A DNA stretch of 63,995 nucleotides, filler included, from Octopus bimaculoides (taxonomy: Eukaryota), in assembly GCF_001194135.2 (NCBI RefSeq). It is 6 parts of 6 records of this genome, joined end to end, with 100 filler letters (N's around TTAATTAATTAA, not from the genome) between each part and the next. Parts side by side here need not be neighbours in the genome. Positions count along the whole stretch, not along the records: positions 62,387 to 63,995 come from NW_026305545.1; 5 more parts are not named here. One strand, 5' to 3'. The translations under genes and the position numbers were made by a program. Below, in pieces: positions 62,287-63,995 of this stretch (position 1 is the first letter of the stretch; each line of letters opens with the position of its first letter). The notes under the pieces were generated by a model, which saw nothing but the letters and a program-made list of their open reading frames with translations, was not told the origin of the DNA and made no database searches.

Positions 62287-62574
62287 NNNNNNNNNNNNNN
62301 NNNNNNNNNNNNNNNNNNNNNNNNNNNNNNTTAATTAATTAANNNNNNNNNNNNNNNNNNNNNNNNNNNNNNNNNNNNNNNNNNNNCAGTGATGATACCA
62401 CGGCCAACATGACCACCACCACAACAACTACCATCACGCCACTACTTCAACCATCGTAACTACCACCACCACCACCACCAATCTCACTATCACTATCACA
62501 ACCTTTTTGCTATTTCCAGCAAAAATTGGTACCTTGTGCCACTGTTTCCTATTTATAATTCTACCTTTATGGTG

Positions 62575-62618
<44 letters not shown>

Positions 62619-62767
62619 ATCTACCTGTCTATCTTGAAAGCCATATACATACGTGTGTGTGTGAGTGTCTGTCTGTGTGTATAAATATATGTATTTATGT
62701 ATGTGTGTATGGGGGTGTGTTGTTACGTTTCCTTCTTTCTATTCTCTTCCATTTCTCTTTATTACAG

Positions 62768-63995
62768 GTCAGCCCAACCTCAACCAGCGACGTTCTCAGT
62801 AACAAAAAACTCTACCCGAACTTCATGAGGGTAGTTCCAGCCGACAGATACCAAGTGGAAGCCATCACCGTTATTCTGGAATTCTTCAAATGGTCCTACG
62901 TGTCTATAGTATTCACAGACAGCAGCTACGGGCGCGACGGAGTAAAACGTCTCAGATCTGTGCTCGGCCAGAAGGGTATTTGCATTTCAAAGACCCTGGA
63001 AATCGGATATGAGTGCACCCCTGAAAACATGCGCAAGACTCTGGCCAAACTTCAGGGTCATAAATCTCCAAAGGTCGTTGTCCTCTACATAGAAATAGTC
63101 GACGTTGAATTGATTTTGCGAATGGTGAAAAGCATGGGGATTGAACGCGATTTCATGTGGGTTGCTAGTGATTCCTTTAGTCTTGGTCTGCCCTACGACC
63201 TGCGCCACATGGTGGTCGGTTCATTGACTGTCAGACCGTATTCAAAACTGGTTGGTGAGTTTGAAGAACGTATGAAACTTCGCTTCCCGTCATCGAAGAA
63301 AACTAACGCGTTTGGAATGCCTTCGACGACCACAACGTCAAAGAACGTATCGATGGATGACGAGTTTAATATGTACGTACCGGCCGGTTTTTATATCGAT
63401 GCTGTCAATGCCTTGGCCACCGGCGCCGACCTGTTGATTAAAGAACGATGTCCACGCTCGACAAGCAGCGAAGAACTGCGCAAATGTGTCAACCCCGTAG
63501 AGCTGTGCAAGAGAATGAGGAATCTCACTTTTAACGGGTCGTACGGCGAGATCTCGTTCGATCAGAACGGCGACGTGGTAGGTATGTATGAGATTATTCA
63601 ATACCAGTATGACGACAACGACCAGGTTAACTACGTGCCGGTCGGTTCCTGGGACATGCGCACAAATCGCCTGAGGATCGACGAAGACCAACTCCGTTGG
63701 CCGCCGACAACAGCGACGTCGGATGGAAACTTCTCTCGGACGCCCCCAGTTTTGAAATGCGGCGATCGCTGTCCAGCCGGTTCCATATATTACTTTCCAA
63801 AAGAGACCTGTTGTTGGGAATGCCGCAAATGTAAAAATAACGAAATCACAGACGAAAACTTGTCCATTTGTAAAATCTGCCCCGAGTTTTATTGGCCTGT
63901 AGACGAGCAGCAGAAGGCCTGTGAGAAAATACCGCCTCACTTCATTCAAATCAGCGACAAGACGGCCATTATCGTCTGCTCGGTGGCTTCAATCG
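62768..63995 (+). CDS. Class C GPCR (metabotropic glutamate receptor-like) large internal exon: Venus-flytrap, nine-cysteine domain and start of TM1; open to window end
   Basis: Acceptor ttctctttattacag, then 409 open codons. Motifs: VSPTSTSDVLSNKKLYPNFMRVVPAD, FKWSYVSIVFTDSSYG, WVASDSF, FYIDAVNALA, FDQNGD, CGDRCPAG...CCWECRKC...ICKICPEFYWP...ACEKIP, and KTAIIVCSVASI (TM1). Confidence 0.96.

What the first reader, a model, noticed from the sequence alone, without database searches (positions are those of the whole stretch)
62768..63995. Orphan class C GPCR with a remodelled glutamate pocket
Seen in sequence: residues equivalent to the mGluR alpha-amino-acid-binding set are kept (T in STS, D in VPAD, Y in SYG, D in ASDS). 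The segment aligning to mGluR1 SKMGFVINA reads VPAGFYIDA, so the Lys (K409 equivalent) that binds the glutamate gamma-carboxylate appears to be Pro. The conserved RNPWFxEFW..C..C loop is replaced by a short Ser/Thr-rich stretch (RFPSSKKTNAFGMPSTTTTSKNVS). Established: loss of the distal basic residues marks non-glutamate class C receptors such as insect mGluX and the CaSR/T1R/V2R-type amino-acid sensors. Inference: a lineage-specific amino-acid or chemosensory receptor rather than a true mGluR.
Basis: partly seen in the sequence, partly recalled or inferred. Interest (0 to 1): 0.72.

Follow-up and report, generated by a model that had tools for sequence, protein, structure and literature searches.

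The report
Cephalopod orphan mGluR-like receptor exon
The piece holds one large, intact exon of a cephalopod glutamate-receptor-like (class C) G-protein-coupled receptor that has lost the residues specific for glutamate; such orphan receptors are common in invertebrates and this one is already in public protein databases, so it is real but fairly ordinary.

Summary
After an intron tail rich in microsatellites, one open exon (62768-63995, 409 codons) encodes about two thirds of a Venus-flytrap domain, a nine-cysteine domain and the start of TM1 of a class C GPCR. The residues that bind the amino-acid backbone are kept (T6, D26, Y54, D135). The mGluR1 K409 position is Pro205, and the RNPWF..C..C loop is replaced by a shorter Ser/Thr-rich stretch modelled at low confidence (suggesting disorder).

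The protein lies outside mGluR classes I-IV, including class IV (the insect mGluX/DmXR class); that clade excludes it with 94-96% bootstrap. It is not grouped with CaSR. It sits in a mollusc clade with Lottia, Aplysia, Dreissena, Mactra and Gigantopelta proteins; its closest named relative is a Sepia pharaonis protein auto-annotated "GRM5". All clade members lack R78 and K409.

This pattern is the rule, not the exception: only 14 of 135 non-canonical relatives have Lys at that column. The gene is under very strong purifying selection (dN/dS 0.027) and looks single-copy. That fits a conserved physiological receptor better than a fast-evolving chemoreceptor. The ligand is unknown; a non-glutamate amino acid is the best guess. 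I rate it a new member of a known kind, of modest interest.

The parts
62387..62767 (+). 3' end of an intron. It is rich in microsatellites ((ACC)6, (TA)19, GT/TGTATGTA arrays) and ends in a polypyrimidine tract and the acceptor AG at 62766-62767.
   Evidence: All frames are closed upstream. The acceptor position is identical in L007 and in cuttlefish L001. Cuttlefish mRNA L004 matches genomic L001 only over 422-1980, i.e. this exon.
62768..63995 (+). One open coding exon (409 codons, phase 0 start) that runs off the end of the piece inside TM1. In relatives the exon continues to a donor after '...QV' in about TM4.
   Evidence: P0177/L007 and L001 show the rest of the exon and the CAG|GTAAG donor.
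62768..63610 (+). Venus-flytrap (ANF_receptor) domain: the C-terminal two thirds (lobe 2 and the second half of lobe 1).
   Evidence: Pfam PF01094 E=5.8e-43, aa 1-281. PDB best hits are mGluR5 and mGluR1 at about 1e-42 to 1e-38. AF2 model pLDDT 89.3; Foldseek top hits are mGlu5/6/8/2/3 and CaSR, TM 0.62-0.77.
62783..63172 (+). Span holding the four retained residues that bind the alpha-amino-acid backbone: T6 (62783-85), D26 (62843-45), Y54 (62927-29) and D135 (63170-72). They correspond to mGluR1 T188, D208, Y236 and D318.
63281..63352 (+). Short Ser/Thr-rich loop RFPSSKKTNAFGMPSTTTTSKNVS in place of the mGluR RNPWFxEFW..C..C loop. It is about 19 residues shorter, has no cysteine pair and is modelled at low confidence (suggesting disorder).
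   Evidence: alignment block. (pLDDT below 50 for aa 178-200). It is the least conserved part against cuttlefish: 60% identity, with indels.
63380..63382 (+). Pro205 codon (CCG) at the position of mGluR1 Lys409, which binds the glutamate gamma-carboxylate.
   Evidence: Pro is conserved in L007/P0177 and in the cuttlefish orthologues P0016 and P0019.
63758..63922 (+). Nine-cysteine domain (CRD), C331 to C385. All nine cysteines are present.
   Evidence: Pfam NCD3G 36.3 bits, aa 327-377. The nine Cys are invariant in a 51-sequence alignment. Positions are listed.
63965..63994 (+). Start of transmembrane helix 1 (AIIVCSVASI), cut by the edge of the piece.
   Evidence: The AF2 helix runs aa 398-408, beginning two residues upstream of this segment. 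P0177 and P0002 continue it into 7tm_3 (PF00003).

Best explanation
The piece carries the end of an intron and one large exon of a coleoid cephalopod gene for a class C (glutamate-family) G-protein-coupled receptor. The 1609-bp contig and its database history suggest an octopus, but I could not confirm that.

The receptor belongs to a mollusc clade of mGluR-like orphans. This clade is paralogous to the canonical metabotropic glutamate receptor classes I-IV and separate from CaSR.

Shown:
- The domain order VFT, nine-Cys CRD, TM1. In orthologues this extends to a full 7TM and a C-terminal tail.
- Intactness of the reading frame, splicing and expression of the cuttlefish orthologue, and very strong purifying selection.
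- Retention of the Ser/Thr, Asp, Tyr and Asp residues that hold the alpha-amino and alpha-carboxyl groups of an amino acid.
- Replacement of the basic residues that hold glutamate's distal carboxylate: K409 to Pro here; R78 to Leu and R323 to Gly by alignment in the orthologue and the window.

Inferred:
- It works like other class C receptors. A dimer whose flytrap closes on a small alpha-amino-acid-like ligand passes the movement through the rigid CRD to the 7TM domain and a G protein.
- The ligand is not glutamate. It is more probably a neutral or otherwise different amino acid or related metabolite.
- Strong conservation and apparent single-copy status suggest a conserved physiological (neuronal or endocrine) signal rather than a diversified environmental chemoreceptor.
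For: Domains:
- ANF_receptor 5.8e-43 plus NCD3G.
- 108 PDB chains match, and the best 60 are all mGluR1-8 or CaSR.
- AF2 model pLDDT 89.3, pTM 0.84; Foldseek top hits are class C extracellular domains.

Orthologues:
- P0002 is 74% identical, and its cluster includes Sepia (Acanthosepion) pharaonis CAE1318086.1, named 'GRM5'.
- The full-length 1030-aa orthologue P0016 comes from a spliced transcript, L004. It matches genomic L001 only across the exon.
- P0177 is 97.9% identical and continues into TM1-TM4.

Selection:
- Against L007: dS 0.32, dN 0.009, dN/dS 0.027.
- Against cuttlefish: pN 0.135 with pS 0.81, which is saturated.

Phylogeny (neighbour joining, 200 bootstraps):
- Window plus cuttlefish sequences group at 100%.
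- They sit in a 12-member clade at 74%, or an 8-member clade at 94% with the full-length region. This clade holds proteins of Lottia, Gigantopelta, Dreissena, Mactra and Aplysia.
- The mGluR I-IV references form a clade at 94-96% that excludes it. CaSR is elsewhere.
- phmmer scores agree: 260-296 bits to clade members against 100-143 to mGluR I-IV and about 121 to CaSR.

Pocket residues: one search gives the residue table. Every clade member lacks R78 and K409 but keeps S165 (as S or T), T188, Y236 and D318, and all but one (P0042, Asn) keep D208.

Published precedent: such a pattern predicts loss of glutamate binding with an amino-acid ligand still possible (Ramos-Vicente et al. 2018, PMC6307864, citing Mitri et al. 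2004 for DmXR).
Against: - No functional or expression data exist for this gene.
- The ligand inference rests on sequence alignment alone. I could not inspect model coordinates.
- R78 is not in the piece. In the cuttlefish orthologue an Arg and a Lys lie 3 and 1 residues before the aligned Leu (QRVKLAEA), so a basic side chain might still reach the pocket.
- The trees are neighbour-joining trees on 420-616 columns with an unresolved backbone.
- GPRC6A, T1R, V2R, GABA-B and DmXR itself were not included as named references.
- Single-copy status is judged from databases whose cephalopod coverage I do not know.
Confidence: 0.7

Rival explanations
1. It is a divergent but genuine group I metabotropic glutamate receptor (as the cuttlefish orthologue is auto-annotated, 'GRM5') and still responds to glutamate.
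For: The best PDB sequence and fold matches are mGluR5 and mGluR1. The Sepia pharaonis orthologue is named GRM5. E292 and the backbone-binding residues are kept.
Against: - Scores to mGluR5 (148 bits) are hardly above those to CaSR (122 bits).
- True lophotrochozoan group I orthologues (Lottia, Capitella mGluR1-5) group with human mGluR1/5 at 100% and keep R78, R323 and K409. This protein lies outside the I-IV clade.
- Clade relatives carry contradictory automatic names (mGluR2-like, 3, 7-like), which is typical of non-orthologues.
Confidence: 0.08
2. It is the cephalopod member of mGluR class IV (the DmXR/mangetout, insect 'mGluX' class), the known non-glutamate sister of classes I-III.
For: It has the same signature: R78 and K409 replaced, backbone residues kept. 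Class IV is reported in all bilaterian phyla except vertebrates (PMC6307864).
Against: - The Lottia and amphioxus class IV references pair at 98% and join classes I-III at 94-96%, excluding this protein.
- Lottia has a separate gene (P0029, LOTGIDRAFT_71543) in this protein's clade, so the two clades are paralogous.
- The class IV references have Ala78 and Gln409 and keep the R(N/D)PW...C...C loop. This protein has Leu and Pro and lacks the loop.
Confidence: 0.05
3. It is an external chemosensory (taste or olfactory-type) amino-acid receptor of suckers or the olfactory organ, analogous to vertebrate T1R/V2R/OlfC.
For: The backbone-binding set is kept while the distal pocket is changed, as in CaSR/T1R/V2R-type sensors (established knowledge). 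Ramos-Vicente et al. raise chemoreception as a possibility for divergent mGluR-like proteins.
Against: - There is no sign of family expansion. Only one 50%-identity cluster covers the cephalopod sequences, and the next relatives are at most 40% identical.
- dN/dS is 0.027 and identity is 77% across the octopus-like versus cuttlefish split. That is unusually constrained for a chemoreceptor.
- It does not group with CaSR.
- A survey of cephalopod GPCR expansions found none in class C (PMC6408891).
Confidence: 0.12
4. Its flytrap no longer binds a ligand, and the protein serves as a non-binding partner subunit in a heterodimer (as GABA-B2 does), or it is a decaying pseudogene.
For: One disulfide loop and the C289/C291 pair are lost and a low-confidence (probably disordered) loop is inserted. 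In the cuttlefish orthologue the TM7 'PKxY' motif reads 'TKLC'.
Against: - The five backbone-binding positions are conserved in the cephalopod gene and, with one Asn exception at D208 (P0042), across the clade.
- The open frame is intact and under strong purifying selection.
- The cuttlefish orthologue has a spliced transcript.
- The pseudogene reading is effectively excluded.
Confidence: 0.05

Closest known systems
Sepia (Acanthosepion) pharaonis CAE1318086.1 'GRM5' and its full-length transcript form (P0016)
   Same: It is the orthologue. Identity is 74-77% over the exon. Both have the same splice acceptor, Pro at the K409 position, the same missing RNPWF/Cys loop, and the same nine-Cys CRD and 7TM.
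   Different: It comes from a different cephalopod order. The loop differs by small indels. The 'GRM5' name is an automatic label that the phylogeny does not support.
Mollusc mGluR-like proteins: Lottia LOTGIDRAFT_71543, Gigantopelta XP_041375631 ('mGluR7-like'), Dreissena XP_052231779 ('mGluR2-like'), Aplysia XP_005103969 ('mGluR3'), Mactra KAL4235379
   Same: They are in the same clade (74% bootstrap on the window region, 94% on the full-length region). All lack R78 and K409 and both loop cysteines. All keep S165, T188, D208, Y236 and D318.
   Different: Identity is only 35-40%. Several (P0026, P0003, P0030, P0047) still have the NPW motif that the cephalopod gene has lost.
mGluR class IV (Drosophila DmXR/mangetout; Ramos-Vicente et al. 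2018, Mitri et al. 2004)
   Same: The functional logic is the same: an mGluR-type receptor whose R78 and K409 are replaced while the backbone-binding residues stay. The fly receptor does not respond to glutamate.
   Different: It is a separate clade. Class IV groups with classes I-III and excludes this gene. Class IV has Ala78 and Gln409 and keeps the RNPW..C..C loop.
Vertebrate group I mGluRs (mGluR1/5)
   Same: They are the best sequence and fold matches among solved structures (about 27-30% identity). The VFT-CRD-7TM architecture is the same.
   Different: R78, R323 and K409 are all replaced. The C289/C291 and C378/C394 cysteines are absent. It is not orthologous.
CaSR (and by extension the GPRC6A/T1R/V2R amino-acid sensors)
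   Same: The amino-acid backbone site is kept and the distal positions are not basic (CaSR has Trp at 78 and Ile at 409). Overall distance is similar.
   Different: It does not group with CaSR in either tree. GPRC6A, T1R and V2R were not tested as named references.

Membership tests
Class C (glutamate-family) GPCR | Venus-flytrap ligand-binding domain (Pfam ANF_receptor) | tested here: met
   PF01094 E=5.8e-43, aa 1-281. The AF2 model matches mGlu and CaSR extracellular domains.
Class C (glutamate-family) GPCR | Nine-cysteine domain between the VFT and the 7TM | tested here: met
   NCD3G scores 36.3 bits, just under the 38.9 cut-off. All nine Cys (331-385) are present and invariant in the 51-sequence alignment.
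Class C (glutamate-family) GPCR | 7tm_3 heptahelical domain | tested here: inconclusive
   Only the first 10-12 residues of TM1 lie in the piece. PF00003 is recorded for P0177 (97.9% identical) and for cuttlefish P0002 and P0016.
Metabotropic glutamate receptors, classes I-III | Lys at the mGluR1 K409 position (binds the glutamate gamma-carboxylate) | tested here: not met
   It is Pro205 by HMMER and by MAFFT, and sits just before helix 206-227 in the model.
Metabotropic glutamate receptors, classes I-III | Arg at the mGluR1 R78 position | not testable with these tools
   The upstream exon is absent from the piece. In the cuttlefish orthologue P0016 the aligned residue is Leu, with Arg and Lys 3 and 1 residues before it.
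Metabotropic glutamate receptors, classes I-IV | Phylogenetic placement inside the clade of reference class I-IV sequences | tested here: not met
   The reference clade has 94% bootstrap (window region) and 96% (full-length orthologue) and excludes it.
mGluR class IV (DmXR/mangetout, 'mGluX') | R78 and K409 non-conservatively replaced while backbone-binding residues are kept | tested here: met
   with the criterion taken from PMC6307864. R78 is read only in the orthologue.
mGluR class IV (DmXR/mangetout, 'mGluX') | Monophyly with class IV reference sequences | tested here: not met
   Lottia and amphioxus class IV pair at 98% and join classes I-III, not this protein. DmXR itself was not included.
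CaSR / GPRC6A / T1R / V2R amino-acid and cation sensors | Phylogenetic grouping with reference members | tested here: not met
   Human CaSR (sequence verified against 7sil_A) groups with other hits, not with the window protein. GPRC6A, T1R and V2R references were not available, so that part is untested.

The most novel reading that the evidence does not exclude
The cephalopod gene represents a mollusc-wide (perhaps lophotrochozoan-wide) fifth class of mGluR-like receptors. The open literature I could search does not name this class. It is paralogous to classes I-IV and tuned to a conserved non-glutamate amino-acid-type transmitter or metabolite. Because the gene is so tightly conserved in coleoids, deorphanising it could uncover a signalling system of the cephalopod nervous or endocrine system that has not been recognised.
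Probability: 0.3. Interest if true: 0.55.

Novelty: new member of a known kind. Interest (0 to 1): 0.3.

Why it matters
If the inference holds, cephalopods and other molluscs carry a strongly conserved receptor of the glutamate-receptor family that does not sense glutamate. Its ligand would be an unidentified signal, an amino acid or related small molecule.

That would be useful for annotation. 'GRM5', 'mGluR2-like', 'mGluR3' and 'mGluR7-like' are all misleading labels for this clade. It would also serve as a deorphanisation target.

It does not change any general picture. Orphan class C receptors with this residue pattern are already known (class IV/DmXR, CaSR-type sensors) and are numerous in invertebrate genomes.

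Tried and rejected
- The k-mer-seeded protein search returned only 5 hits. The exhaustive representative search was needed to find the clade.
- The top representative hits, P0021-P0025, are 2000-3900-aa fused predictions of tandem arrays. I left them out of the trees.
- Biopython neighbour joining with bootstraps timed out, so I replaced it with a numpy implementation.
- The first dN/dS run used an exon start one base off and gave nonsense. It was corrected.
- dS against cuttlefish is saturated, so no ratio can be given there. I used the close relative L007 instead.
- The Foldseek search against the PDB does not discriminate between mGluR subtypes and CaSR: TM 0.62-0.77 for all.
- Literature searches for a named mollusc or cephalopod class C clade found nothing specific. 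Ritschard et al. 2019 report cephalopod expansions only in classes A and B.
- A search for the SRA run accessions in papers, to identify species and tissues, found nothing.
- The pseudogene reading was rejected on the intact frame, the selection result and the spliced transcript.

Full report
**What is in the piece**

Positions 62387-62767 have stops in all frames. They are full of microsatellites ((ACC)6, (TA)19, GT/TGTATGTA arrays). They end in a long polypyrimidine tract and the dinucleotide AG at 62766-62767.

From 62768 to the edge of the piece one frame stays open for 409 codons. Three observations show that 62768 is a real exon start:
- A genomic contig of a close relative (L007, 90.8% nucleotide identity) has the same acceptor.
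- A cuttlefish genomic contig (L001) has it too.
- A 3455-nt cuttlefish transcript (L004) matches L001 only across that exon, L001 positions 422-1980.

In the relatives the exon continues about 330 bp further, to a CAG|GTAAG donor after '...QV' in roughly TM4.

**What it encodes**

Pfam finds ANF_receptor (E=5.8e-43, aa 1-281). NCD3G scores 36.3 bits, just below its cut-off. All nine cysteines of that domain are present and invariant in a 51-sequence alignment. The last ten residues start TM1.

Against solved structures the best matches are mGluR5 (4e-42) and mGluR1, followed by mGluR8, 4, 6, 7, CaSR and mGluR3/2. All lie within 105-148 bits.

An AlphaFold2 model built on 51 homologues is confident (pLDDT 89.3, pTM 0.84) except for residues 178-200. 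Foldseek returns mGlu and CaSR extracellular domains with TM 0.62-0.77 and does not discriminate among them.

HMMER and MAFFT with published mGluR sequences agree:
- T6 = T188
- D26 = D208
- Y54 = Y236
- D135 = D318
- E109 = E292
- P205 = K409

The K409 equivalence is gapless around G-F-x-I-[DN]-A. P205 directly precedes helix 206-227 of the model.

The R323 position aligns to Gly. The C289/C291 pair and the C378/C394 loop cysteines are absent.

The segment carrying RNPWFxEFW..C..C in mGluRs is 19 residues shorter. It is Ser/Thr-rich, has pLDDT below 50 (suggesting disorder) and is the least conserved region against cuttlefish.

The one gap is R78, which lies in an exon outside the piece. In the full-length cuttlefish orthologue P0016 it aligns to Leu, although Arg and Lys lie 3 and 1 residues before it.

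**Whose gene it is**

The window protein is already held by NCBI, UniRef and MetaClust; its names are masked here.

Its nearest relative is 74% identical. That cluster includes Sepia (Acanthosepion) pharaonis CAE1318086.1, auto-named 'GRM5'. A sequence 97.9% identical (P0177) comes from other sequencing runs.

The source is therefore a coleoid cephalopod other than a cuttlefish. 'Octopus' is my inference.

**Is it functional?**

- Against L007: dS 0.32, dN 0.009, dN/dS 0.027.
- Against cuttlefish: synonymous sites are saturated (pS 0.81) while pN is 0.135.
- The cuttlefish gene is transcribed and spliced.

It is a constrained, working gene.

**Where it belongs**

I took reference sequences from the source alignment of Ramos-Vicente et al. 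2018 (PMC6307864). These were human mGluR1-5, Lottia and Capitella classes I-III, and Lottia and amphioxus class IV. I combined these with the single-receptor proteins among the best 150 hits of an exhaustive search of 1.84 billion proteins.

In a neighbour-joining tree of the window region (149 sequences, 420 columns, 200 bootstraps):
- The class I-IV references form a clade (94%) that excludes the window protein.
- Window plus cuttlefish sequences group at 100%.
- They sit in a 12-member clade (74%) with proteins of Lottia, Gigantopelta, Dreissena, Mactra and Aplysia. Their automatic names contradict one another: hypothetical, mGluR7-like, 2-like, 3.

With the full VFT-to-TM3 region of the cuttlefish orthologue (123 sequences, 616 columns), the mollusc clade reaches 94% and the I-IV clade 96%. 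CaSR groups elsewhere.

phmmer scores say the same: 260-296 bits to clade members, 100-143 to mGluR I-IV and about 121 to CaSR.

Lottia has both a class IV gene and a member of this clade, so the two are paralogous.

**How unusual the pocket is**

Every member of the mollusc clade, and of its sister clade (which includes a leech protein), lacks R78 and K409. Across the 28 sequences compared they nearly always keep S165 (S or T), T188, D208, Y236 and D318; the exceptions are a few Asn at D208 and one Ser at T188.

Among all non-canonical relatives, 14 of 135 have Lys at the 409 column and 12 of 112 have Arg at the 78 column. The backbone positions are kept in about 85-96%.

What is specific to the cephalopod gene is Pro at 409 and the complete loss of the NPW motif, which some clade members still have.

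**Mechanism**

By homology this should be a dimeric class C receptor. Its flytrap would close on a small ligand held by the conserved backbone-binding residues and signal through the CRD to the 7TM domain.

The loss of all three basic residues that hold glutamate's distal carboxylate argues against glutamate. The same argument was made, and tested for the fly receptor, for class IV.

A different amino acid or related metabolite is the best guess. It is an inference.

Strong constraint and apparent single-copy status, together with the absence of class C expansions in a cephalopod GPCR survey (PMC6408891), fit a conserved physiological receptor better than an expanded chemoreceptor family.

**Verdict**

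The finding is real and the sequence was read correctly. 'Not a true mGluR' is supported. The analogy to mGluX is functional, not phylogenetic. The chemosensory idea has no support so far.

It is a new member of a known kind: invertebrate orphan mGluR-like class C receptors. It is already present in databases under misleading automatic names. Interest is modest.

Noticed in passing
window 62462-62711: The intron tail is a chain of microsatellites: (ACC)6 at 62462-62480, (TA)19 at 62578-62615, and GT and TGTATGTA arrays at 62653-62711.
   Followed up: partly
L001 422-1980; L007 184 onward; ORF ends of P0003 and P0004: Intron positions are conserved. The acceptor before VSPTSTSD is shared between the window, L007 and cuttlefish. 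The ORFs of clade members P0002, P0177 and P0003, and of sister-clade P0004, all end just after a '...QV' in about TM4, which suggests a shared phase-1 donor across the clade.
   Followed up: partly
P0016 (transcript L004 132-3224), about residues 165-275 and the TM7 region: The full-length cuttlefish orthologue has a Ser/Thr-rich insertion of about 110 aa in lobe 1 of the flytrap. The class C TM7 'PKxY' motif reads 'TKLC', and the intracellular-loop 'KTNR' reads 'KTIR' (also in P0177).
   Followed up: no
PMC6307864, Figure 6-source data 3: In the published alignment the Lottia class III orthologue (mGluR4-8_Lgi) has Leu, not Lys, in the K409 column. Either that gene model is faulty there, or even a canonical-class mollusc receptor has lost this residue.
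   Followed up: no
P0021-P0025, P0031, P0034 and others: The highest-scoring database hits are 1800-3900-aa 'proteins' with up to 20 separate flytrap matches, for example Polypterus senegalus 'CASR protein, partial'. They look like tandem arrays of class C genes fused by gene prediction.
   Followed up: partly
L003 10001-12124 (ENA ERZ25074796, 1.09-Mb contig): Clade member P0003 (34% identical) is encoded from its start codon to TM4 in one uninterrupted ORF of 707 codons. It lacks the intron that the cephalopod gene has before VSPTSTSD. The source organism is unknown.
   Followed up: no
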